Part shown: positions 3,586-56,448 of the stretch, one piece after another
How positions within the stretch are numbered: the stretch's first letter is position 1
Layout: the number at the start of each line of letters is the position of its first letter
Assembly: GCF_963921235.1 (NCBI RefSeq)
Contig: NC_086128.1
Location: forward strand, 41,354,001-41,418,000
DNA: 64,000 nt
Direction of reading: 5' to 3'
Source: Mobula hypostoma
Lineage: Eukaryota
Position numbers and translations under genes: made by a program
The notes under the pieces: model-generated
What the model was told of the DNA's origin: nothing
Database searches by the model: none
Seen by the model: the letters and a program-made list of their open reading frames with translations, nothing else

Positions 3586-4542
3586 TCACCTAGATCTCAA
3601 TGCTGCCACTTGCCTTGACTTTTCTCATCTGTCTGGGTCTCAATACTGGACCCTCTTCCAGGATCACCACTGTCTTCTCAGGTATAGTGGAATTAGAATG
3701 GGCAAGGATTACAAGCTTGCATGGGGTTGGCTGGAGGTGCCACATGAGGCAGCATTGGAGAGGTGTGGTCGGTGATATATCAGGCAGCACTTTGGGCCTG
3801 AAGAAGGGTTAAATAACTTGAAAGGTATTAATTGAGCCGAGTTCTCCTTTAAATCATGAGGACCCAGGTCTTGTAGTGATCTCAGATTCTGTTGTGGAGC
3901 GATATTAACTTCACACATGCCTCACATACTTTAGTCAAGGCACTGAAAAATACTACAAGTGCTCTCTTTGCAAAATTCTCCAAGTTGACTGGAACAAAAT
4001 CCTAGAAGTGGCATTAAGACATGAGCAGTGTGTGCCATGCTATTCCACATGTGCATAGAGAATCCCAGAATAAAAAGTTCCCATCTCTCAATCCACACTG
4101 TTAAACTCTAATAATCTATTATGTTTGCGTTTCCTGAAATTGGTTTGTGCAGCACACAAAACATTGCACCATATAATCTCATTTCTAGGTCATTGTCTCA
4201 CCAGGTGAGATTCGTGAAATTCTAAAATGAAGCACTTCCAGCTTAATTCTCTGAATTAAACAGGGTGGCCACAAATAGGTTTTGTAAAATATATTTCCTC
4301 AGAAGTGCCAGCTGTTGCTGAAGCCCACAAATTCTGGGTGAAAATGTGATATGATCAGCGAGCCAAATCACTCTAACAAGAGGTCCTTAGCACACGTTCT
4401 TTCTCACTGCTTCTGTCATTTAGATAAGCTAATTGAAATAAACCTACACAACAGGAATTCTGCAGATGCTGGAAATTCAAGCAACATACATCAAAGTTGC
4501 TGGTGAACGCAGCAGGCCAAGCAGCATCTATAGGAAGAGGTA

Positions 4543-4580
4543 CAGTCGACGTTTCAGGCCGAGACCCTTCGTCAGGACTA
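4543..4580 (-). ncRNA. Minimal type I hammerhead ribozyme in the PLE 3' UTR
   Basis: RNA reads uaguc-CUGACGA-agg(gucucgg)ccu-GAAA-cg-UC-gacug: catalytic core, stem I aguc/gacu, stem II agg/ccu, palindromic ACGU in place of stem III. Matches the minimal HHRs known from PLEs. Confidence 0.85.
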
Positions 4581-4874
4581 ACTGAAGGAAGAGTGAGTAA
4601 GGGATTTGAAAGCTGGAGGGGGAGGGGGAGATGCAAAATGATAGGAGAAGACAGGAGGGGGAGGGATAGAGCCGAGAGCTGGACAGGTGATAGGCAAAAG
4701 GGGATACGAGAGGATCATGGGACAGGAGGCCTAGGGAGAAAGACGGGGAGGGGGGGTGACCCAGAGGATGGGCAAGTGGTATATTCAGACGGACAGAGGG
4801 AGAAAAAGGAGAGTGAGAGAAAGAATGTGTGCATAAAAAGGAGTAACAGCTGGGGTACGAGGGGGAGGTGGGGC

Positions 4875-7800
4875 CTAGCGGAAGTTAGAGAAGTCAATGT
4901 TCATGCCATCAGGTTGGAGGCTACCCAGACGGAATATAAGGTGTCGTTCCTCCAACCTGACTGTGGCTTCATCTTTACAGTAGAGGAGGCCGTGGATAGA
5001 CATGTCAGAATGGGAATGGGATGTGGAATTAAAATGTGTGGCCACTGGGAGATCCTGCTTTCTCTGGCGGACAGAGCGTAGATGTTCAGCAAAGCGGTCT
5101 CCCAGTCTGCGTCGGGTCTCACCAATATATAAAAGGCCACATCGGGAGCACCGGACGCAGTATATCACCCCAGTCGACTCACAGGTGAAGTGATGCCTCA
5201 CCTGGAAGGACTGTTTGGGGCCCTGAATGGTGGTAAGGGAGGAAGTGTAAGGGCATGTGTAGCACTTGTTCCGCTTACACGGATAAGTGCCAGGAGGGAG
5301 ATCAGTGGGGAGGGATGGGGGGGACGAATGGACAAGGGAGTTGTGTAGGGAGCGATCCCTGCGGAATGCAGAGAGAGGGGGGGAGGGAAAGATGTGCTTA
5401 GTGGTGGGATCCCGTTGGAGGTGGCGGAAGTTACGGAGAATAATATGTTGGACCCGGAGGCTGGTGGGGTGGTAGGTGAGGACCAGGGGAACCCTATTCC
5501 TAGTGGGGTGGTGGGAGGATGGAGTGAGAGCAGATGTACGTGAAATGGAGGAGATGCGTTTAAGAGCAGAGTTGATAGTGGAGGAAGGGAAGCCCCTTTC
5601 TTTAAAAAATGAAGACATCTCCCTCGTCCTAGAATGAAAAGCCTCATCCTGAGAGCAGATGCGGCGGAGACGGAGGAATTGCGAGAAGGGGATGGCGTTT
5701 TTGCAAGAGACAGGGTGAGAAGAGGAATAGTCCAGATAGCTGTGAGAGTCAGTAGGCTTATAGTAGATATCAGTGGATAAGCTGTCTCCAGAGACAGAGA
5801 CAGAAAGATCTAGAAAGGGGAGGGAGGTGTCGGAAATAGACCAGGTAAACTTGAGGGCAGGGTGAAAGTTGGAGGCAAAGTTAATAAAGTCAACGAGTTC
5901 TGCATGCGTGCAGGAAGCAGCGCCAATGCAGTCGTCGATATAGCGAAGGAAAAGTGGGGGACAGATACCAGAATAGGCACGGAACATAGATTGTTCCACA
6001 AACCCAACAAAAAGGCAGGCATAGCTAGGACCCATACGGGTGCCCATAGCTACACCTTTAGTTTGGAGGAAATGGGAGGAGCAAAAGGAGAAATTATTAA
6101 GAGTAAGGACTAATTCCGCTAGACGGAGCAGAGTGGTGGTAGAGGGGAACTGATTAGGTCTGGAATCCAAAAAGAAGCGTAGAGCTTTGAGACCTTCCTG
6201 ATGGGGGATGGAAGTATATAAGGACTGGACATCCATGGTGAAAATAAAGCGGTGGGGGCCAGGGAACTTAAAATCATCGAAAAGTTTAAGAGCGTGAGAA
6301 GTGTCACGAACATAGGTAGGAAGGGATTGAACAAGGGGTGATAAAACCGTGTCAAGGTATGCAGAAACGAGTTCGGTGGGGCAGGAGCAAGCTGAGAGAA
6401 TAGGTCTGCCAGGACAGGCAGGTTTGTGGATCTTGGGTAGGAGGTAGAAACGGGAAGTGCGGGGTGTGGGAACTATAAGGTTGGTAGCAGTGGATGGGAG
6501 ATCCCCTGAGCGGATAAAGTCGGTGATAGTGTGGGAGACAATGGCCTGGTGCTCCTTGGTGGGGTCACGAACGAGGGGTAAATAAGAGGAGGTATCCGCG
6601 AGTTGTCGCTGTGCCTCGGCAAGGTAGAGGTCAGTACGCCAGACTACAACAGCACCCCCCTTATCGGCGGGTTTAATAATAAGGTTAGGATTAGTGCGGA
6701 GGGAGTGGAGAGCAGAGCGTTCCGAAGGAGTGAGGTTAGAATGGGGACAAGGTGCGGTGAAGTCGAGACGGTTGATGTCCCGTCGGCAGTTGGCAATAAA
6801 GAGATCCAGAGCAGGCAGAAGACCAGAGCGGGGTGTCCATGAAGAAGAGGAGGGTTGAAGACGGGAGAAGGGGTCATCGGTGGGGGTGGAAGAGTCCTTG
6901 CCGAAGAAGTAGGCTCGGAGACGGAGACGGCGGAAGAAAAGTTCCGCATCATGGCGAACACGGAACTCGCTGAGGTGTGGGCGAAGGGGGACAAACGTGA
7001 GGCCCTTACTGAGAACAGAGCGTTCTGCCTCCGACAGTTGAAGGTCGGAGGGGATGGTAAAGACCCGGCACGGATGAGAGCTGGGATCAGAAGGGGGAGG
7101 GGGAGGCTGGGGGTGTCAGTGGAGAGGGGAGGGTTGGGGTGAGAGGAAGATGGAGCCTCTGAGGGCCCAGGAGCTGACGGTGGGATCTGAGGGAGACGGG
7201 ATTGCAGAGTATTGGTGGGGGAAGGGGAGACGGGAGTCACAACAGCAGCACATAAAGACCCAGCCTGGAGTTCAAGGCCGGAGTCGCAGTTGGTGGTTGC
7301 GTAATCACTGTGAAGGTGTCCATGGTCGTGGCTGGAGTCCGGGTTTTGAATATGCCCTGAGGTGTTGGAGCCGCCGAGATCAATGGCAGGCGCCGCAATT
7401 GAAAGTTCATGCCTGCTAGCGTCGGGGCCGGCAGGCTCTGGGGTCCGTAGATGTAAGATCTTGCGATCTTTGCCTAACATGACAAAGTCAAAAAAACGGC
7501 GATTGCAGGCGTGGATCCGACGGAGGATGAAATAGCGGGTAGGACCATTACAGACGGCGAAGAAAGTGTCCCGAAGGTGTGGAAGGGTCTGGGATAGGGA
7601 CACCAAGTACCTCCTCATGGCGGAGAGCGTCGCCTTCAGAGCTTGACGGGAGAAGCGGCGAGAGGCAGAGTCAATAAAATGTGAGTACCTGGGATCCTCA
7701 GAAGGTCCAAATTGAGAGGCTTGGAAACGAATCCTAAAGCCAACTAGAGTAAGTTGGCGACGGAGGCACGTTCCAAGAAAGGATACATGGCAGTGATAGC

Positions 7801-7924
7801 GAGTCTGAGTCAAAATGTGGTCGAAAAGTTGAAGAGCCGAAGAAATCACAGATGGGGAGCAGTGAGAGATGGTTTCACTGAACTCCCGTCGAAGAGAGGA
7901 TCTAAACTTCTTCGGTGTAGGCAT
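4875..7924 (-). CDS. PLE polyprotein (N-terminal domain, Pro/Ser-rich linker, RT, Cys-rich linker, GIY-YIG endonuclease), ~1016 aa if one C is restored at ~7100
   Basis: ATG at 7924 (MPTPKKFR). Adding 1 C in a homopolymer at ~7100 (5 C here, 6 in the other arm) joins it to the frame with KPADKG, LPKIHK, GRPI, DVQSLYTSIP, QTKGVAMG, RYIDD, CKRNKCYTC and GVIYCVRCSRCGLLYIGETRRRLGDRFAEH. Stop at 4875. Confidence 0.9.
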
Positions 7925-10268
7925 CACCAATACTCTGCAATCCCGTCTCCCTCAGATCCCACCGTCAGCTCCTGGGCCCTCAGAGGCTCCATCTTCCTCT
8001 CACCCCAACCCTCCCCCCTCCACTGACACCCCCAGCCTCCCCCCTCCCCCCCGATATCAGCTCTCGTCCATGCCGGGTCTTCACCATCCCCTCCGACCTT
8101 CCACTCTCTGAGGCAGAGCGCTCTGTCCTCAGTAAGGGCCTCACGTTTGTCCCCCTTCGCCCACACCTCAGCGAGTTCCGTGTTCGCCATGATGCGGAAC
8201 TTTTCTTCCGCCGTCTCCGTCTCCGAGCCTACTTCTTCGGCAAGGACTCTTCCACCCCCACCGATGACCCCTTCTCCCGTCTTCAACCCTCCTCTTCTTC
8301 ATGGACACCCCGCTCTGGTCTTCTGCCTGCTCTGGATCTCTTTATTGCCAACTGCCGACGGGACATCAACCGTCTCGACTTCACCGCACCTTGTCCCCAT
8401 TCCAACCTCACTCCTTCCGAACGCTCTGCTCTCCACTCCCTCCGCACTAATCCTAACCTTACTATTAAACCCGCTGATAAGGGGGGTGCTGTTGTAGTCT
8501 GGCGCACTGACCTCTACCTTGCCGAGGCACAGCGACAACTCGCGGATACCTCCTCTTATTTACCCCTCGATCGTGACCCCACTAAGGAGCACCAGGCTAT
8601 TGTCTCCCACACTATCAACGACTTTATCCGCTCAGGGGATCTCCCATCCACTGCTACCAACCTTATAGTTCCCACACCCCGCACTTCCCGTTTCTACCTC
8701 CTACCCAAGATCCACAAACCTGCCTGTCCTGGCCGACCTATTGTCTCAGCTTACTCCTGCCCCACCGAACTCGTTTCTGCATACCTTGACACGGTTTTAT
8801 CACCCCTTGTTCAATCCCTTCCTACCTATGTTCGTGACACTTCTCACGCTCTTAAACTTTTCGATGATTTTAAGTTCCCTGGCCCCCACCGCTTTATTTT
8901 CACCATGGATGTCCAGTCCTTATATACTTCCATCCCCCATCAGGAAGGTCTCAAAGCTCTACGCTTCTTTTTGGATTCCAGACCTAATCAGTTCCCCTCT
9001 ACCACCACTCTGCTCCGTCTAGCGGAATTAGTCCTTACTCTTAATAATTTCTCCTTTTGCTCCTCCCATTTCCTCCAAACTAAAGGTGTAGCTATGGGCA
9101 CCCGTATGGGTCCTAGCTATGCCTGCCTTTTTGTTGGGTTTGTGGAACAATCTATGTTCCGTGCCTATTCTGGTATCTGTCCCCCACTTTTCCTTCGCTA
9201 TATCGACGACTGCATTGGCGCTGCTTCCTGCACGCATGCAGAACTCGTTGACTTTATTAACTTTGCCTCCAACTTTCACCCTGCCCTCAAGTTTACCTGG
9301 TCTATTTCCGACACCTCCCTCCCCTTTCTAGATCTTTCTGTCTCTGTCTCTGGAGACAGCTTATCCACTGATATCTACTATAAGCCTACTGACTCTCACA
9401 GCTATCTGGACTATTCCTCTTCTCACCCTGTCTCTTGCAAAAACGCCATCCCCTTCTCGCAATTCCTCCGTCTCCGCCGCATCTGCTCTCAGGATGAGGC
9501 TTTTCATTCTAGGACGAGGGAGATGTCTTCATTTTTTAAAGAAAGGGGCTTCCCTTCCTCCACTATCAACTCTGCTCTTAAACGCATCTCCTCCATTTCA
9601 CGTACATCTGCTCTCACTCCATCCTCCCCCCACCACCCCACTAGGAATAGGGTTCCCCTGGTCCTCACCTACCACCCCACCAGCCTCCGGGTCCAACATA
9701 TTATTCTCCGTAACTTCCGCCACCTCCAACGGGATCCCACCACTAAGCACATCTTTCCCTCCCCCCTCTCTCTGCATTCCGCAGGGATCGCTCCCTACAC
9801 AACTCCCTTGTCCATTCGTCCCCCCCATCCCTCCCCACTGATCTCCCTCCTGGCACTTATCCGTGTAAGCGGAACAAGCGCTACACATGCCCTTACACTT
9901 CCTCCCTTACCACCATTCAGGGCCCCAAACAGTCCTTCCAGGTGAGGCATCACTTCACCTGTGAGTCGACTGGGGTGATATACTGCGTCCGGTGCTCCCG
10001 ATGTGGCCTTTTATATATTGGTGAGACCCGACGCAGACTGGGAGACCGCTTTGCTGAACATCTACGCTCTGTCCGCCAGAGAAAGCAGGATCTCCCAGTG
10101 GCCACACATTTTAATTCCACATCCCATTCCCATTCTGACATGTCTATCCACGGCCTCCTCTACTGTAAAGATGAAGCCACAGTCAGGTTGGAGGAACAAC
10201 ACCTTATATTCCGTCTGGGTAGCCTCCAACCTGATGGCATGAACATTGACTTCTCTAACTTCCGCTAG
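7925..10268 (+). pseudogene. 5'-truncated inverted copy of the PLE ORF (RT + GIY-YIG) with frameshifts at ~8050 and ~9760
   Basis: ORFs 8905-9945 and 9942-10268 match the minus-arm protein. The arm begins inside the Pro/Ser linker. Both indels lie in C runs. Confidence 0.9.
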
Positions 10269-10562
10269 GCCCCACCTCCCCCTCGTACCCCAGCTGTTAC
10301 TCCTTTTTATGCACACATTCTTTCTCTCACTCTCCTTTTTCTCCCTCTGTCCCTCTGAATATACCTCTTGCCCATCCTCTGGGTCACCCCCCCTCCCCGT
10401 CTTTCTCCCTAGGCCTCCTGTCCCATGATCCTCTCGTATCCCCTTTTGCCTATCACCTGTCCAGCTCTCGGCTCTATCCCTCCCCCTCCTGTCTTCTCCT
10501 ATCATTTTGCATCTCCCCCTCCCCCTCCAGCTTTCAAATCCCTTACTCACTCTTCCTTCAGT

Positions 10563-10600
10563 TAGTCCTGACGAAGGGTCTCGGCCTGAAACGTCGACTG
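10563..10600 (+). ncRNA. Minimal type I hammerhead ribozyme in the inverted PLE arm
   Basis: tagtc CTGACGA agggtctcggcct GAAA cgTC gactg; predicted cleavage after C10595. Confidence 0.85.
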
Positions 10601-11129
10601 CGCCTCTTCCTATAGATGCTGCTTGGCCTGCTGCGTTCACCAGCAACTTTGATGTATGTTGAAATAAACCTACCAGTGGTTCATGTATCCTCCCACTCAC
10701 AAAGAAAAACGGCCTCAGAGGCCTCGCTGTGTTCCATAAACAATTTCTGTTGCACAATCCATGATCCATCAAAATGTGTAAATTAATGATATTTCTTTTT
10801 CCAGCATGGACTGACTTTGTGAGAATAAGTTATTTTATGTTAGCTATTTACTCTTTTAAAATGTAAAATAAGTGAATTCTTACTTGGGCATTCAGCAGGT
10901 TCCTGGCCCACTCTTCTCCACCAATGTGACAAGATGCCAGATCATTTTTCTCCACCTGCTACTCATATTCCTTGTAACTTGCAAAATAATCCTATTAGGT
11001 TAAGGCAAGGTTAATAACTGGTTCACAAAACTGAAGCTTTATTAAAATAGTCAAGAAATGGTAGTTTGTGATACTAACTTTACACGGATCTTATTGTCAA
11101 GGTACTTAAAAAGACTACCAATGCTGTCT

Positions 11130-11620: not shown

Positions 11621-11807
11621 TACAATGGAAGAAAAGTTGGTAGAGTATCTAGCCCTACAAAATTCATCCAAATGTATGGAAAGTTGGCCACCCATCTCTT
11701 GGCTCGTGTTGTGCTTGCAGGTCTAAAGAGACTTCCACATCATTTATCCATCAAGATATATCAGTCTCCATGCAAATCTCTTTTTGGAGGTTTGTTTAGT
11801 AAACTGG

Positions 11808-13890
11808 ACCATAAAACCACAAGACATAGGAGCAGAATTAGGCCATTCAGCCCATCAAGTCTGCTCTGCCATTCCATCATTGTTGATCCTGGATCCCACT
11901 CAACCCCATATACCTGCCTTCTTGCCATATCCTTTGATGCCCTGACTGACTAGGAAACGATCAACTTCCACCTTAAATATATGCACAGACTTGGCTTCCA
12001 CCGCAGTCAGTGGCAGAACATTCCATAGATTTGCTACTCTCTGGCTAAAAAAATTCTTCCTTGCCTCTGTTCTAAAGGGTCGCCCCTCAAATTTGAGGCT
12101 CTCCCCTCTAGTTCTGGATACCCCCGCCAAAGGAAACATTTGCTACACATTCATGCTATCTAGTCCTTTCAACATTCAGTAGGTTTCAATGAGCCCTCCC
12201 CCACATTCTCCTAAATTCCAGTGAGTACAGTCCCAATGCAGCCAAACGCTCCTCATATGTTATCCCCTTCATTCCCAGAATTATCCTTGTGAACCTCCTC
12301 TGGATTCTCTCTAATGACAACACATCCTTTTTGAGATATGGGGCCCAAAATTGTTGACAATACTCCAAGTGCTATCTGACTGGTGTCTTATAAAGGCTCA
12401 GCATTATCTCCTTGCTTTTATATTTTATTCCCCTTAAAATGAATGCCAACATTGCATTTGCCTTCTTTACCACAGACTCAACCTGTAAATTAACCTTCTG
12501 GGAGTCTTGCACGAGGACTACTGAGTCCCTCTGCAGCTCTGATATTTGAACCTTCTCTCCATTTAGATAATAGTTTTCACTGTCTTCTCCTATCATTTTG
12601 CATCTCCCCCTCCCCCTCCCCCTCCAGCTTTCAAATCCCTTACTCACTCTTCCTTCAGTTAGTCCTGACGAAGGGTCTCGGCCTGAAACGTCGACTGTAC
12701 CTCTTCCTATAGATGCTGCCTGGCCTGCTGCGTTCACCAGCAACTTTGATGTATGTTGCTTGAATTTCCAGCATCTGCAGAATTCCTGTTGTTTTCACTA
12801 TTGTTCCTTTTACCAAAATGCATTAACATACATTTCCCAACACTGTATTCCATCTGCCACTTTTTTGCCCATTCTTCCAATTTGTCTAAGTCTTACAGCA
12901 ATCACATTGCTTCCTCAGCACTACCTACCCCTTCACCTATCTTCGTATCATCCGCAAACTTTGCCACAAAGCCGTCAGTTCCATTATCTAAGTCATTGAC
13001 AAACAATGTGAAAAGCAGTGGTCACCGGCAGCCAACCAGAAAAGGTCACTTTTATTCCTACTAGCTGCCTCCTGCCTGTCAGCCATTCCTCTATCCATGC
13101 CAGTATCTTTCCTGTAACGCTATAAAATTTTATCTTGTTAAGCAGTCGCATGTGTGGCACCTTATCAAACGCCTTCTGAAAATCTAAGTAAATGACATCC
13201 ACTGCCTCTTCTTTGTCCACCCTGCTTGTTAATTCCTCGAAGAACTCTAACAGATTTGTCAGGCAAGATTTCCCTTCACTGAAACCATGCTGACTTTGAC
13301 ATATTTTATCATTAGTTTCCAAGTACCTCGGCATCTCATCCTTAATAATAGACTCCAACACTTTCCCAACTAATGGGGGTAGGCTAACTGGCCTATAATT
13401 TCCTATCTTTTGCCTTCCTCCCTTCTTAAAGAGTGGAGTGACATTTACAATCTTCCAGTCCTCCAGGACCATGCCAGAATCAAGTGATTCTTGGAAGATC
13501 ATGACTAATGCATCCATTATCTCTTCAGCAACCTCTCTCAAAACTCTGGGATGTCGTCCATCTGGTCCAGGTGACTTATCCACCTTAAGACCTTTGTGTT
13601 TGCCTAGCACTTTTTCCTTTGTAATAGCAATGGCACTCACTCCTGCTCCCTGACACTCACGGACCACTGGCACACTGCTAGTGTCTTCCACAGTGAAGGT
13701 AGATGCAAAGTACCCATTAAGTTCATCTTCCATTTCCTTGTCCCCCATTACCACCTCACCAGCATCATTTTCCAGTGGTCCGATATAAACTCTCACCTCC
13801 CTTTTACTCTTCATATAACTGAAACAACGTTTGGTATCCTGCTTTATATTATTGGCGAGTCTGCCCTCATAATTCATATTTTCCTTTTTG
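11808..13890 (-). mobile_element. CR1 (HER1-like) LINE, 5'-truncated, with internal deletion near 13020 and a PLE insertion at 12582-12790
   Basis: ORF 12993-13877 (KSPGPDG, NYRPVSL, YLDFQKAFDKVPH) and ORFs 11900-12139 and 12186-12368. Close relative of the 43743-46530 copy. Confidence 0.92.
12582..12790 (+). mobile_element. 209-bp 5'-truncated PLE 3' end with intact HHR (12660-12697) and 9-bp TSD
   Basis: Nearly identical to the PLE 3' UTR at 4448-4655. gttttcact at 12573-12581 and 12791-12799. Confidence 0.92.
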
Positions 13891-27673: not shown

Positions 27674-27804
27674 TCCTGCTGAGGGGTTTCAGCCCAAAAT
27701 GTCGACAATACTCTTTTCCATAGATGCTGCCTGGCCTGCTGAGTTCCTCCAGCATTTTGTGTGTGTTGCTTGGATTTCCAGCATCTGCAGATTTTCTGTT
27801 GTTT
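27674..27804 (+). mobile_element. PLE 3'-end fragment starting at a decayed HHR
   Basis: tcctgctgaggggtttcagcccaaaatgtcgac..tagatgctgcctggcctgctgagttcctccagca..cagcatctgcag. Confidence 0.8.
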
Positions 27805-28463: not shown

Positions 28464-28594
28464 AAATAAGAGAAAATCTGCAGGTGCTGGAAATCAAAGC
28501 AACACACAGAAAATGCTGGAGGAACTCAGAAGGCCAGGCAGCATTTATGGAAGAGAGTACAGTTGACATTTATGACCAAGACCTTCATCAGGAC
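28464..28594 (-). mobile_element. PLE 3'-end fragment ending at the HHR
   Basis: ctgcaggtgctggaaat..tgctggaggaactcag..ccttcatcaggac (gtcCTGATGAagg on the minus strand). Confidence 0.8.
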
Positions 28595-43742: not shown

Positions 43743-46530
43743 TGAGACCTGGCTAAAGGATGCATGTCTCTGGGAGCTGAATGTCCAAGGATACACGGTG
43801 TATCGGAAGGATAGGAAGGTAGGCAGAGGGGGAGGCATGGCTTAATTGGTAAGAAATGATATTAAATCATTAGAAAGAGGTGATATAGGATCGGAAGGTG
43901 CAGAATCTTTATGGGTTGAGCTAAGAAATAGCAGGGGTAAAAGGACCCTGATGGCAGTTATTTATAGGCCTCCAAATAGCTGCAGGGATGTGGACTACAA
44001 ATTACAGCTGGAAATAGAAAAGGCTTGTCAGAAGGGCAGTGTTATGATAATTGTGGGGGATTTTAACATGCGAGTAGATTGGGAAAATCAGGACGGCACT
44101 GGATCTCAAGAGAGAGAATTTGTAGAATGTCTGCGAGGTGTTTTTTTAGAACAGCTTGTTGTTGAGCCCACTAGGGGATCGGCTGTACTGGATTGGGTAT
44201 TGTGTAATGAACCGGAGGTGATTAGAGAGATTGAGGTGAAGGAACCCTTAGGAGGCAGTGATCATAACATGATTGAGTTCACTGTGAAATTAGAAAAGGA
44301 GAAGCTGAAATCTGATGTGTCGGTATTTCAGTGGAGTAGAAGAAATTACAGTGGCATGAGAGAGGAACTGGCCAAAGTTGACTGGAAAGGGACACTGGCG
44401 GGAAAGACGGCAGAGCAGCAGTGGCTGGAGTTTATGCAAGAAATGAGGAATGTGCAAGACAGGTATATTCCAAAAAAGAAGAAATTTTCGAGTGGAAAAA
44501 GGATGCAACCATGGTTGACAAGAGAAGTCAAAGCCAAAGTTAAAGCAGAGGGCATACAAGGAAGCAAAAATTAGTGGGAAGACAGAGGATTGGGAAGTTT
44601 TTAAAACCTTACAAAAGGAAACCAAGAAGGTCATTAAGAGAGAAAAGATTAACTATGAAAGGAAGCTAGCAAATAATATCAAAGAGGATACTGAAAGCTT
44701 TTTCAAGTATATAAAGAGTAAAAGACAGGTGAGAGTAGATATAGGACCGATAGAAAATGATGCTGGAGAAATTGTAATGGGAGATAAGGAGATGGCAGAG
44801 GAACTGAATGAGTATTTTGCATCAGTCTTCACTGAGGAAGACATCAGCAGTACACCGGACACTCAAAGGTGGCAGGGAAGAGAAGTGTGCGCAGTCACAA
44901 TTACGACAGAGAAAGTACTCAGGAAGCTGAATAGTCTAAAGGTAGATAAATCTCCTGGACCAGATGGAATGCACCCTTGTGTTCTGAAGGAAGTAGCTGT
45001 GGAGATTGCAGAGGCATTAGCAATGATCTTTCAAAAGTCGATAGATTCTGGCATGGTTCTGGAAGACTGGAAGATTGCAAATGTCACTCCGCTATTTAAG
45101 AAGGGGGCAAGGAAGCAAAAAGGAAATTATAGACCTGTTAGCTTGACATCGGTGGCTGGGAAGTTGTTGGAGTCGATTGTCAAGGATGAGGTTACAGAGT
45201 ACCTGGAGGCAATTGACAAGATAGGCAGAACTCAGCATGGATTCCTTAAAGGAAAATCCTGCCTGACAAACCTATTACAGTTTTTTGAGGAAATTACCAG
45301 TAGGTTAGACAAGGGAGATGCAGTGGATGTTGTATATTTGGATTTTCAGAAGGCCTTTGACAAGGTGCCACACATGAGGCTGCTTAACAAGATAAGAGAG
45401 CATGGAATTACAGGAAAGTTACATACGTGGATAGAGCGTTGGCTGATCGGCAGGAAACAGAGAGTGGGAATAAAGGGATCCTATTCTGGTTGGCTGCCGG
45501 TTACCAGTGGTGTTCCACAGGGATCAGTGTTGGGGCCGCTTCTTTTTACATTGTACATCAACGATTTGGATTATGGAATAGATGGCTTTGTGGCTAAGTT
45601 TGCTGACGATACGAAGATAGGTGGAGGGGCCGGTAGTGCTGAGGAAACGGAGAGTCTGCAGAGAGACTTGGATAGATTGGAAGAATGGGCAGAGAAGTGG
45701 CAAATGAAGTACAATGTTGGAAAGTGTATGGTTATGCACTTTGGCAGAAAAAATAAACGGGCAGACTATTATTTAAATGGGGAAAGAATTCAAAGTTCTG
45801 AGATGCAACGGGACTTGGGAGTCCTTGTACAGGATACCCTTAAAATTACCCTCCAGGTTGAGTCAGTAGTGAAGAAGGCGAATGCAATGTTGGCATTCAT
45901 TTCTAGAGGAATAGAGTATAGGAGTAGGGATGTGATGTTGAGGCTCTATAAGGCGCTGGTGAGACCTCACTTGGAGTACTGTGGGCAGTTTTGGTCTCCT
46001 TATTTAAGAAAGGATGTGCTGACGTTGGAGAGGGTACAGAGAAGATTCACTAGAATGATTCCGGGAATGAGAGGGTTAACATATGAGGAACGTTTGTCTG
46101 TTTTTGGACTGTATTTCTTGGAGTTTAGAAGAATGAGGGGAGACCTCATAGAAACATTTCGAATGTTGAAAGGCACGGACAGAGTGGATGTGGCAAAGTT
46201 GTTTCCTATGATGGGGGAGTCTAGTACGAGAGGGCATGACTTAAGGATTGAAGGGCGCCCATTCAGAACAGAAATGCGAAGAAATTCTTTTAGTCAGAGG
46301 GTGGTGGATCTATGGAATTTGTTGCCACGGGCAGCAGTGGAGGCCAAGTCATTGGGTGTATTTAAGGCAGAGATTGATAGGTATCTGAGTAGCCAGGGCA
46401 TCAAAGGTTATGGTGAGAAGGCGGGGCAGTGGGACTAAATAGGAGAATGGATCAGCTCGTGATAAAATGGCAGAGCAGACTCGATGGGCTGAATGGCCTA
46501 CTTCTTCTCCTTTGTCTTATGGTCTTATGG
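43743..46530 (+). mobile_element. Young CR1 (HER1-like) LINE, 5'-truncated within the endonuclease domain, 7-bp TSD
   Basis: tctaatc at 43736-43742 and 46531-46537; (tcttatgg)2 tail. APE motifs ETWL, YRPP, GDFN, SDH. RT ORF 44729-46438. Stop at ~43833 and frameshift at ~44550. Confidence 0.95.
44729..46438 (+). CDS. CR1 ORF2 reverse transcriptase portion (569 aa open)
   Basis: KSPGPDG, NYRPVSLTS, DFQKAFDKVPH, GVPQGSVLGP, KFADDTK. Confidence 0.9.
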   Translation: MRVDIGPIENDAGEIVMGDKEMAEELNEYFASVFTEEDISSTPDTQRWQGREVCAVTITTEKVLRKLNSLKVDKSPGPDGMHPCVLKEVAVEIAEALAMIFQKSIDSGMVLEDWKIANVTPLFKKGARKQKGNYRPVSLTSVAGKLLESIVKDEVTEYLEAIDKIGRTQHGFLKGKSCLTNLLQFFEEITSRLDKGDAVDVVYLDFQKAFDKVPHMRLLNKIREHGITGKLHTWIERWLIGRKQRVGIKGSYSGWLPVTSGVPQGSVLGPLLFTLYINDLDYGIDGFVAKFADDTKIGGGAGSAEETESLQRDLDRLEEWAEKWQMKYNVGKCMVMHFGRKNKRADYYLNGERIQSSEMQRDLGVLVQDTLKITLQVESVVKKANAMLAFISRGIEYRSRDVMLRLYKALVRPHLEYCGQFWSPYLRKDVLTLERVQRRFTRMIPGMRGLTYEERLSVFGLYFLEFRRMRGDLIETFRMLKGTDRVDVAKLFPMMGESSTRGHDLRIEGRPFRTEMRRNSFSQRVVDLWNLLPRAAVEAKSLGVFKAEIDRYLSSQGIKGYGEKAGQWD

Positions 46531-48000
46531 TCTAATCCTCTGATGAGGACCTGGCTCCTGGACTCCCGGTTCCCTCCTCCTGAAGTCAATAATCAGCTGC
46601 TTGGTCTAGCTGACATTGAGGGAGAGTTTGCTGTTGTGGCACCACTCAGACAGATTTTCAATCTCCTTTCTATGTGCTGATTTGTCACCACCTTTGATTT
46701 GGCCAACAACGTTGGTGTCATCAGCAAACTTAAATATGGCATTGGAGTGAGTAGTGCTTAGCCACACAGTCGATAGTGTAAAATGAGTAGAGCAGGGGGC
46801 TAAGCACACAGCCTTGTGGTGTACCTGTGCTGATGGAGATTGTGGAGGAGATATTGTTGCCAATCTGAACTGACTGGAGCCTGCAAGTGAAACCCAGATC
46901 CCATTGCACAAGGAGGTACTGAGCCAAGGTCTTAAAACTTATTGATTATTTTTGAGGGGATGATGGTATTGAATGTCCAGCTGTAGTCGATAAAGAGCCA
47001 ATGAGATGGCATCTGGTCTGTGGATTTGTTGTGCTGGGTAGGCAAATTGGCATGGATCCAAGTCACATCTCAGGAGGAGTTGATACGTTTCATTACCAAC
47101 CTCTCAAAACACTTCATCACTGTGGATATAAGTACTACTGGATGATAGTCATTGAGGCAAGTCACCATGTTCTTCTTAGGCCAAGGGTGTAATTGAAGCT
47201 GCTTGAAGCAGGTGGGTACCTCAGACTGGGGAAGGGAGAGTTTCAAGATATCAGTGAACACTCCAGCTAGTTGATGAGCACAGGTCTTTAATACTTGGCT
47301 AGGTACCGCATCTGGGCTGGATGCTTTCTGTGGATTCACCCTCATGTAGGATGCTCTTATGTCAGCCTCAGAGATTGAAATCACACGGTCACTGGGGGCT
47401 GTGGAAGTTTGTGAAGGTACCTCCATGTTTTGATGGTCAAAGTGAGCATAAAAGGCATTGAGCTCATCTGGGAGAGAAACCTTGTTGTCACCTAAGTTGC
47501 CTGGTTTCACTTTGTAAGAGGTAATAACATTCAAGCCCTTCCACAGCTGTTGAACATCCTTCAGTGATTCAAGTTTGGTCTCAAGAGACGCCTTTCCAGA
47601 GGTTGTTCTTGGACTTCTTGTATCTTGGTCACCAGACCTGAATGCGCTCAGCAGATTGTGGATCTCATGGCTCATCCAGGGCTTCTGGTGGGGGAAGATG
47701 CTGAATGATTTTGAGGGGACACACTCATCTACAACTATTTTTGTAAAGTCCGTGACAACCGTGGCATATTCATTCAAGTCCTCTGATGAGTCCTTGCACA
47801 CTGCTCAGTCCACCGACTCAAGGCAATCCCACAGCCACTCTTCTGCCTCCTGCAACCATCTTTCTGTTGTCCTTATCTCTGGAGCCTTGCTCTTTTGCCT
47901 CTGCCTGGATACAGGTAGAAGGACAAAACCAAGCTGACAGCATCATACAAAGCTGATGCGTGATATTGGAGTAAGTGTGGGGACTGAAAGGCCTTTGTCT

Positions 48001-56254: not shown

Positions 56255-56448
56255 CACAAAAACCTGGAGGATATCAGTGGGTCAGGTAGCACCTATGGAG
56301 GGAAATGGACAATCAACATTTTGCATTGGATCTCGATCAGAAACGCTGACTGTCCATTTCCCTTCATAGGTGCTGCCTGGCCTGCTGAGTTCCTTCAGCT
56401 TTGTGTGTTTTGCTCCTGATTTCCAGCATCTGCTGCCTCTTGTGTCTC
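56255..56448 (+). mobile_element. Older fold-back PLE mini-element centred on the HHR
   Basis: 56252-~56320 is an inverted copy of ~56342-56409. caaaatatttcaaca (56240-56254) vs caaaatagtgcaaca (56449-56463) is a 13/15 TSD. Confidence 0.75.

What the first reader, a model, noticed from the sequence alone, without database searches (positions are those of the whole stretch)
7925..8760. The two arms appear to come from different template RNAs (synonymous-biased differences in the 5' part only)
Seen: over ~8010-8760 the plus arm differs from the minus arm at roughly 20 sites, at least 12 of them synonymous. Examples: ctg tcg gag gca gaa cgc tct gtt vs ctc tct gag gca gag cgc tct gtc; gcc/gct twice; cgt/cgc; acc/act; aga/cga; tct/tcc. 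From ~8760 to 9600 I found no differences, and only scattered ones further 3'. Inference: post-insertion mutation would not favour synonymous sites, so two functional source copies contributed (two RNPs, or a template switch near 8760). Later conversion of the outer arms is an alternative.
Basis: partly seen in the sequence, partly recalled or inferred. Interest (0 to 1): 0.8.

Follow-up and report, generated by a model that had tools for sequence, protein, structure and literature searches.

The report
Penelope-like retroelement twin insertion, mosaic arms
This is one ordinary head-to-head insertion of a Penelope-like retrotransposon in a ray-like genome. Its two arms are identical over most of their length but differ in two short 5' blocks, mostly at silent codon sites, so the arms carry sequence from different lineages of the element family.

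Summary
The arms (plus 7925-10661, minus 7217-4482) differ at 30 substitutions and 4 homopolymer-length indels. Of the substitutions, 24 lie in 7925-8760, none in 8754-9878 (1125 bp) and 6 in 9879-10661. In the homology-supported frame, 13 of 19 differences are synonymous (5.4 expected, P=4e-4, dN/dS about 0.16).

The element is a canonical endonuclease-containing Penelope-like element (PLE):
- a full-length minus copy (4448-7924) abuts an inverted 5'-truncated copy (7925-10661);
- a 35-nt tail is present at one end only;
- a 12-bp target-site duplication (4436-4447 and 10662-10673) flanks the whole pair, so it was one insertion event.

Silent-site bias means the 5' differences arose in replicating lineages, not in place. 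The pattern, however, is a mosaic: two divergent blocks with very different silent-site divergence, separated by 275 identical bases. One switch near 8760 does not explain it.

I could not separate three routes to this mosaic: two non-identical templates at insertion, two units of one tandem transcript, or later gene conversion. DNA of other copies of this family could not be fetched. Polishing artefact is also not excluded.

The architecture is known. The footprint bears on the unsettled mechanism behind PLE inverted repeats.

The parts
4436..4447 (.). Left copy of the 12-bp target-site duplication (AAATAAACCTAC), directly outside the 3' end of the minus copy.
   Evidence: Read. It is identical to 10662-10673.
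4448..7924 (-). Full-length copy of a Penelope-like element (minus copy). The ORF runs from the ATG at 7924-7922 to the stop at 4877-4875. The 3' untranslated region is 4874-4448. The ORF is one gene, broken once by a frameshift, with no in-frame stops.
   Evidence: RT and GIY-YIG lie in one open frame. tblastn with four full-length relatives gives 2 HSPs, 1 frame change and 0 stops, and P0129 aligns from its residue 1. The N-terminal domain is homologous to the N-termini of full-length PLE proteins.
4448..4482 (-). 35-nt 3' 'tail', present on the minus copy and on unrelated fragments of the family but absent from the plus arm.
   Evidence: Alignment A1. It matches the 30-40-bp tail described as present at one end only of PLE insertions (PMC8557442, PMC11167929).
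7218..7924 (-). Unique 707-nt 'spacer' between the arms. It is the 5' end of the minus copy, encoding the N-terminal domain that the truncated plus arm lacks.
   Evidence: Searches give the repeat limits. Searches show homology to residues of about 1-160 of full-length PLE proteins.
7925..10661 (+). Inverted copy (plus arm), 5'-truncated and 35 nt shorter at its 3' end. Its 5' end abuts the first base of the minus copy with no bases between. The ORF remnant is 7925-10268, one gene, broken once by a frameshift (besides the truncation), with no in-frame stops.
   Evidence: Pfam finds RVT_1 and GIY-YIG. tblastn gives 2 HSPs, 1 frame change and 0 stops.
8017..8127 (+). Divergent block 1, with minus-arm counterpart 7014-7125. 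It has 12 substitutions in 111 bp. In the homology-supported frame (8068-8127), 6 are synonymous and 1 non-synonymous.
8128..8402 (+). Identical block of 275 bp inside the divergent 5' part.
   Evidence: permutation P=3e-4. expects 5.1 silent differences at the neighbouring rate; none is seen.
8403..8753 (+). Divergent block 2, with minus-arm counterpart 6388-6738. It has 12 substitutions in 351 bp: 7 synonymous and 5 non-synonymous.
8754..9878 (+). Identical block of 1125 bp with no substitution (RT core).
   Evidence: expects 20 silent differences at the 5' rate (P of zero is 2e-9).
9879..10661 (+). 3' part with 6 substitutions (0.77%): 1 synonymous, 1 at a second codon position, and 4 in the 3' untranslated region. 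The last four include an adjacent pair where the plus arm alone departs from all other family fragments in the window.
   Evidence: and alignment A1.
10662..10673 (.). Right copy of the 12-bp target-site duplication. Three more bases (TTG) also match and may be microhomology at the priming site.

Best explanation
One integration event of an endonuclease-containing Penelope-like element produced the canonical head-to-head structure. A full-length copy abuts an inverted 5'-truncated copy. A 35-nt tail is at one end only, and a 12-bp duplication of an AT-rich target flanks the whole.

The two arms were not copied from one identical template. Their 5' parts carry sequence from diverged lineages of the same family. 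Those differences accumulated under purifying selection in replicating elements, before this insertion.

The most likely route is two complementary-DNA syntheses, one primed on each target strand, on two non-identical templates. The templates could be two RNAs, or two units of one multimeric transcript from a heterogeneous tandem source. Exchanges between templates during copying, or earlier in the sources' history, left a mosaic of identical and divergent blocks.

Shown: the single event, the clustering, the silent-site bias and the mosaic. Inferred: that the differences were already present when the insertion formed, and the priming on both strands.
For: - PLE identity: RT and GIY-YIG lie in one frame. 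Identity to full-length PLE proteins is 50-58%.
- Single event: a 12-bp direct repeat lies exactly at both outer 3' ends.
- Canonical anatomy: an inverted 5'-truncated copy at the 5' end, and a tail at one end only (PMC8557442).
- Clustering: 24 of 30 substitutions fall in the first 836 bp (P=3e-8) and none in 1125 bp.
- Silent-site bias: 13 synonymous against 6 non-synonymous, with 5.4 synonymous expected (P=4e-4); dN/dS is about 0.16.
- Editing is unlikely: there is no strand-asymmetric substitution signature, and only 4 of the 24 5' differences are CpG-associated transitions.
- Both arms carry derived amino-acid states. At two block-1 sites each arm's state recurs in copies from other elasmobranchs.
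- A purified PLE protein cleaves and extends both target strands in vitro and is predicted to be a dimer. Source loci give multi-copy transcripts (PMC11167929).
- A second, unrelated PLE insertion (L081) has an inverted arm whose terminal repeat matches the upstream repeat of its partner rather than the downstream one. This is a further hint of non-identical templates within one insertion.
Against: - Four exchange points within about 750 bp and none in the remaining 1900 bp is not a parsimonious result of template switching.
- Inverted repeats 0.7 kb apart are good substrates for gene conversion, which gives the same mosaic.
- Several non-synonymous differences change residues conserved in relatives, as neutral decay would.
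- No other copy of the family could be examined at the DNA level. Whether either arm's variants form a haplotype shared with other copies is therefore unknown.
- This is one locus only. The survey of other PLE loci yielded one usable pair.
- All four indels are homopolymer-length changes, which warns that the assembly may carry consensus errors.
Confidence: 0.55

Rival explanations
1. Gene conversion after insertion. Two versions are possible.
(a) The arms came from two templates that were divergent throughout, and arm-to-arm conversion later homogenised 7925-8016, 8128-8402 and 8754 onward.
(b) The arms were identical at birth, for example by self-priming on one template. One arm then received a tract of about 750 bp from a third, diverged copy elsewhere, with patchy mismatch repair.
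For: - The mosaic of identical and divergent blocks has sharp limits.
- The blocks differ in silent-site divergence.
- The arms are 2.7 kb long, inverted and only 707 bp apart. By established knowledge of palindrome conversion, this arrangement favours intramolecular conversion.
- The self-priming model of PLE inverted repeats (PMC3846280) predicts arms identical at birth.
- A donor from another lineage would also give silent-site bias.
Against:
- Version (b) needs an ectopic event on a very young insertion. The arms show no substitution in 1125 bp, and the duplicated target copies are identical.
- Two homopolymer-length indels persist inside the 'homogenised' 1125-bp block. Recent conversion should have erased them, unless they are newer or are assembly errors.
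- The junction is not a palindrome, whereas the self-priming model was inferred from palindromic junctions.
Confidence: 0.27
2. Assembly or polishing artefact. Reads from other copies of this repeat family were used when the consensus of one arm was polished. That imported paralogous variants in patches, or erased real differences elsewhere.
For: - Variants imported from paralogues would be silent-biased and patchy, as seen.
- All four arm-to-arm indels are length changes in homopolymer runs of 6-7 bases, a typical residual consensus error.
- PLE tandem and inverted structures are known to trouble assemblies (PMC8557442).
Against: - The structure itself is coherent. It has an exact target duplication, a unique 707-nt spacer and a tail at one end.
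- Block 1 has 12 differences in 111 bp, which would need a consistently mis-mapped read pile.
- There are no N runs or other signs of a join in the region.
Confidence: 0.1
3. Mutation in place, or reverse-transcriptase errors, on two arms copied from the same template.
For: - Some non-synonymous differences hit conserved residues.
- The 6 differences in the 3' part and the indels may well be of this kind.
Against: - The silent-site bias (P=4e-4).
- A rate difference of tenfold or more between adjacent segments.
- Up to 36% silent-site difference in block 1 next to zero in 275 bp.
- No editing-like strand bias.
Confidence: 0.04

Closest known systems
[quoted passage not shown]
   Same: [quoted passage not shown]
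- An inverted 5'-truncated copy directly at the 5' end of a full copy.
- A 35-nt tail at one end only.
- A short target-site duplication in an AT-rich target.
- A CTGACGA...GAAAC motif in the 3' untranslated region, like the hammerhead core.
   Different: - There is no direct partial tandem (pseudo-LTR) at this locus.
- Rfam finds no hammerhead.
- The clade within PLEs was not determined.
- In the papers I read, I found no report that the arms of one insertion carry silent-biased, block-wise differences.
Twin priming of LINE-1 (Ostertag and Kazazian 2001; from my own knowledge, not read here)
   Same: The second target strand is used as a second primer during one insertion. This gives an inverted 5' segment flanked by one target-site duplication.
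   Different: Twin priming copies two different, non-overlapping parts of one RNA, so it makes an inversion and not a duplication. Here the arms overlap over 2.7 kb, so the sequence was copied twice, and the two copies are not identical.
Recombinant cDNAs from two co-packaged RNAs in retroviruses and LTR retrotransposons (established knowledge)
   Same: Mosaic products with silent-biased differences between parental lineages, made by template switching of the reverse transcriptase.
   Different: No particle or packaging is known for PLEs. Here the two products sit side by side in one insertion, so each serves as an internal reference for the other.
Arm-to-arm gene conversion in genomic palindromes (for example sex-chromosome palindromes; established knowledge)
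   Same: Inverted arms kept identical over long tracts, with leftover divergent patches.
   Different: Those palindromes are tens of kb to Mb in size and old. This pair has 2.7-kb arms and looks very young.

Membership tests
Penelope-like element, endonuclease-containing (canonical) | Reverse transcriptase domain of the PLE type in a single long ORF | tested here: met
   Pfam RVT_1 matches at E=4e-5 to 5e-5, which is below Pfam's own cut-off. Identity to full-length proteins with the precomputed architecture DUF8422-RVT_1-HTH_animal(-GIY-YIG) is 50-58%, with E down to 1e-150 and lower.
Penelope-like element, endonuclease-containing (canonical) | C-terminal GIY-YIG endonuclease in the same ORF | tested here: met
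   PF01541 scores 24.4 bits against a 22.6-bit cut-off on the plus-arm piece. It scores 19.5-20.6 bits on the minus copy, in the same open frame as RT.
Penelope-like element, endonuclease-containing (canonical) | Inverted 5'-truncated copy adjacent to the 5' end of a longer copy | tested here: met
   The arms are 4482-7217 and 7925-10661. The minus copy extends 707 nt further, to its ATG.
Penelope-like element, endonuclease-containing (canonical) | [quoted passage not shown] | tested here: met
   The 35 nt at 4448-4482 are present on the minus copy and on four other fragments, and absent from the plus arm.
Penelope-like element, endonuclease-containing (canonical) | Short target-site duplication, AT-rich target | tested here: met
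   The 12-bp AAATAAACCTAC lies at 4436-4447 and 10662-10673.
Penelope-like element, endonuclease-containing (canonical) | Direct partial tandem forming pseudo-LTRs | tested here: not met
   There is no direct repeat of the 3' region upstream of the ORF at this locus. The feature is frequent in the family, not obligatory (PMC8557442).
Penelope-like element, endonuclease-containing (canonical) | Hammerhead ribozyme motif in the terminal repeat / 3' region | tested here: inconclusive
   Rfam gives no hammerhead match at E up to 0.1 over 9.5 kb, or at E up to 10 over 176 nt. A CTGACGA...GAAAC core-like motif is visible at about 10568-10600 and is conserved among the young fragments.
LINE-1-type twin priming product | Inverted and direct segments are non-overlapping parts of one template | tested here: not met
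   The arms overlap over 2737 bp.
Self-primed (snap-back) PLE inverted repeat (model of PMC3846280) | Palindrome at the inverted junction, with arms copied one from the other and so identical at birth | tested here: not met
   The junction at 7924/7925 is not palindromic. The arms differ at 24 silent-biased sites next to the junction. Later conversion could still hide an identical birth state.

The most novel reading that the evidence does not exclude
The locus is a natural footprint of a PLE integration complex that held two different template RNAs at once, one per target strand. This would fit the predicted protein dimer and the two-strand cleavage and extension seen in vitro. The reverse transcriptase would have switched between the two templates over the last 750 nt. 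The side-by-side arms would then record heterologous co-templating and recombination within a single insertion. That would argue against the self-priming model. It would also make the mechanism testable by sequence surveys alone.
Probability: 0.25. Interest if true: 0.7.

Novelty: new member of a known kind. Interest (0 to 1): 0.5.

Why it matters
How Penelope-like elements make their tandem and inverted structures is still described as undefined (PMC8557442). Two ideas are on record:
- self-priming on one template (PMC3846280), which predicts arms identical at birth;
- priming on both cleaved target strands, which has in-vitro support (PMC11167929) and allows two templates.

In a young pair bounded by a target duplication, each arm serves as an internal control for the other. 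Silent-biased differences between the arms are then a direct, purely descriptive read-out of whether one or two templates were used.

If the pattern holds in many young pairs, it would favour the two-template view. It would also show that recombination between lineages is part of PLE replication. If the pattern is rare, it points to conversion between repeats. Either way, the locus shows that the question can be asked of genome assemblies.

Tried and rejected
1. DNA of other copies of the family. Two look-ups of the closest proteins (Mobula hypostoma, 94% and 90% identical) returned gene tables but no DNA, because the files are too large. The window's own 453-aa product is not on record.

2. 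Near-identical annotated proteins to type the variants. Three protein searches found nothing closer than 90% over the 5' part.

3. Other copies inside the window. tblastn with the element's proteins finds none outside 4448-10661. Only short 3'-end fragments exist.

4. Generality test on other PLE loci.
   - 80 metagenome loci gave only 8 inverted pairs, of which 7 were old (86-93%) and short. The one 100% pair was 335 bp and was not examined.
   - Five further look-ups gave one usable young pair, L081.
   - Another contig is a tandem array at 1.4x coverage, too error-prone to use.

5. Rfam search for a hammerhead ribozyme: no match.

6. Editing or CpG decay as the cause of the differences: rejected. 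There is no strand-asymmetric signature, and 4 of 24 differences are CpG-associated transitions.

7. The 428-aa ORF 6644-7930 as the coding frame of the arm: rejected downstream of the N-terminal domain. Homology supports a different frame, which ORF listing does not show because it has no ATG, GTG or TTG for more than 320 codons.

8. An intron in the Pro/Ser-rich linker as an explanation for the frame change there: not tested. No tool here predicts introns, and I did not pick a stretch to bridge the change.

Consensus lines that the alignment tools printed on their own were not used.

Full report
**What is there**

The window looks like an elasmobranch genome. The best protein relatives of the element come from Mobula hypostoma (94%), Hypanus sabinus, Hemitrygon akajei and sharks.

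Positions 4448-10661 hold two inverted copies of one retroelement.
- It aligns with full-length Penelope-like element (PLE) proteins of 841-924 aa from their first residues to their last.
- The plus arm (7925-10661) is the same element inverted. It lacks the first 707 nt and the last 35 nt.
- The 5' end of the plus arm touches the first base of the minus copy, whose ATG is at 7924-7922.

The whole pair is flanked by a 12-bp direct repeat, AAATAAACCTAC, at 4436-4447 and 10662-10673. This is a target-site duplication, so both 3' ends were joined to one staggered break. The pair is one insertion event.

The extra 35 nt at the minus copy's 3' end also occur on four other fragments of the family in the window. 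This corresponds to the 30-40-bp 'tail' described as present at one end only of PLE insertions (PMC8557442). That tail has been traced to two alternative internal start sites of reverse transcription (PMC11167929).

The anatomy is therefore the textbook PLE insertion, without the optional direct pseudo-LTR.

**State of the genes**

Measured against four intact relatives, each copy's ORF shows one frame change and no in-frame stop. The plus arm is also 5'-truncated. The arms differ by four indels, all of them length changes of one base type in homopolymer runs of 6-7.

**The observation**

The arms differ at 30 substitutions. By segment:

| Segment | Length | Substitutions |
|---|---|---|
| 7925-8016 | 92 bp | 0 |
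| 8017-8127 | 111 bp | 12 |
| 8128-8402 | 275 bp | 0 |
| 8403-8753 | 351 bp | 12 |
| 8754-9878 | 1125 bp | 0 |
| 9879-10661 | 783 bp | 6 |

The clustering is highly significant (P=3e-8). The 1125-bp identical run was never reached in 100000 permutations. The 275-bp identical gap inside the 5' part has P=3e-4 (all).

The coding frame was fixed by homology, not by ORF length. The plus arm is open from 7927 to 9942 and reads through the conserved PLE motifs. The long ORF 6644-7930 that the ORF listing shows is the true frame only for the N-terminal domain.

In the supported frame (8068-8760), 13 differences are silent and 6 change the residue. A simulation that keeps the mutation spectrum expects 5.4 silent (P=4e-4). 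There pS is 0.072, pN is 0.012 and dN/dS is about 0.16.

At that silent-site rate the 1125-bp block should hold about 20 silent differences, and it holds none.

The two divergent blocks are not equally deep: 6 silent differences at 16.7 silent sites in 8068-8127, against 7 at 92.3 in 8403-8753.

**What the differences are not**

There is no strand-biased substitution pattern that would suggest editing. Only 4 of the 24 are CpG-associated transitions. Mutation in place, or copying errors, would not favour silent sites or stop abruptly at block edges.

**Polarity**

Five elasmobranch relatives and three invertebrate ones were aligned at the non-synonymous sites.
- Both arms carry derived states: three clear cases in the minus arm and two in the plus arm.
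- Some of these fall at residues conserved in all relatives, so part of the replacement changes may be neutral damage.
- At two block-1 sites, the minus-arm state recurs in the Hemitrygon copy and the plus-arm state in Chiloscyllium copies. This fits old, co-existing lineages.
- In the 3' untranslated region, an adjacent two-base difference is derived in the plus arm relative to five other fragments.

**Interpretation**

Silent-site bias shows that the 5' differences arose while the sequences were being selected as working elements, that is, in different lineages of the family. Since the pair is one insertion, the simplest reading is that the two cDNAs were copied from non-identical templates.

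This fits the finding that a purified PLE protein cleaves and extends both strands of its target and is predicted to be a dimer (PMC11167929). It fits less well with the self-priming model, in which one arm is copied from the other (PMC3846280). In addition, the junction here is not a palindrome.

Three points limit the claim.
1. The mosaic needs about four exchange points within 750 bp, and the blocks have different depths.
2. 'Two RNPs' is not needed. PLE source loci are tandem arrays transcribed into multi-unit RNAs (PMC11167929). A contig fetched here shows at least nine tandem units with products of three different lengths (low coverage). Two units of one transcript could therefore serve as the two templates.
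3. Conversion after insertion gives the same picture, whether between the arms or from a third copy. So would a polishing artefact that imports paralogous variants.

The decisive comparison with other copies of the family could not be made. Their DNA was not retrievable, no near-identical proteins are annotated, and the window holds no other long copy.

**Is it general?**

I looked for other young head-to-head PLE pairs. Eighty metagenome loci gave only 8 inverted pairs: 7 were old (86-93%) and short, and the one 100% pair was 335 bp and was not examined.

One good case came from an ENA contig, L081.
- It has an inverted 5'-truncated copy, an upstream pseudo-LTR, an ORF and a downstream pseudo-LTR.
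- The inverted arm and its partner differ at 4 sites in 1253 bp.
- Three of those sites lie in the terminal repeat. There the inverted arm agrees with the upstream repeat and not the downstream repeat of its partner.

This is a second hint that the parts of one PLE insertion need not come from one identical template. It is a single case.

**Verdict**

- The specific mechanisms offered are not resolved, and the single-breakpoint picture is wrong in detail.
- The element and its architecture are known.
- What is new is the internal, silent-biased, block-wise difference between the arms of one young insertion. It bears on an open mechanistic question and can be followed up with descriptive genomics alone.

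Noticed in passing
window 12580-12792 (+): A solo 213-bp 3'-terminal fragment of the same PLE family, including the 35-nt tail. It is 95-97% identical to the arms. It sits inside a LINE copy and appears flanked by a short direct repeat (TTTTCA(CT)). It looks like a strongly 5'-truncated independent insertion.
   Followed up: partly
window 27674-27804 (+) and 28464-28594 (-): Two segments of about 130 bp, 80-83% similar to the PLE 3' end (hammerhead-like core and tail). They are arranged tail-to-tail with 657 bp between them (pair I6). A further fragment lies at 56328-56433. They may be non-autonomous derivatives or an older PLE structure.
   Followed up: partly
window 11807-13877 (-) and 43846-46532 (+): Two copies, 75-79% alike, of a LINE-type retrotransposon with an AP-type endonuclease and a reverse transcriptase. 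The region is rich in retroelements. No host gene was identified near the finding.
   Followed up: partly
window 7927-8904 (+) and its minus-arm counterpart: The true coding frame has no ATG, GTG or TTG for more than 320 codons, so the ORF listing does not report it. An out-of-frame 428-aa ORF is listed instead. The sense strand is strongly C-rich (GC skew -0.42), which keeps several frames open. This is a caution for ORF-based reading.
   Followed up: yes
L081:7986-12603: A canonical invertebrate PLE insertion from an ENA contig. The inverted arm's terminal repeat matches the upstream pseudo-LTR (1 mismatch in 321) rather than the downstream one (3 of the 4 arm differences).
   Followed up: partly
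L083-L085 (one 29.7-kb ENA contig): The contig consists of at least nine head-to-tail PLE units about 2.97 kb apart. The called products are 841, 899 or 750 aa. This illustrates a heterogeneous tandem source array, but coverage is 1.4x, so the differences may be read errors.
   Followed up: no
window 10568-10600 (+), 4510-4542 (-): A CTGACGA...GAAAC motif resembles the hammerhead ribozyme core known from PLE terminal repeats. It is conserved among the young fragments but not recognised by Rfam.
   Followed up: partly
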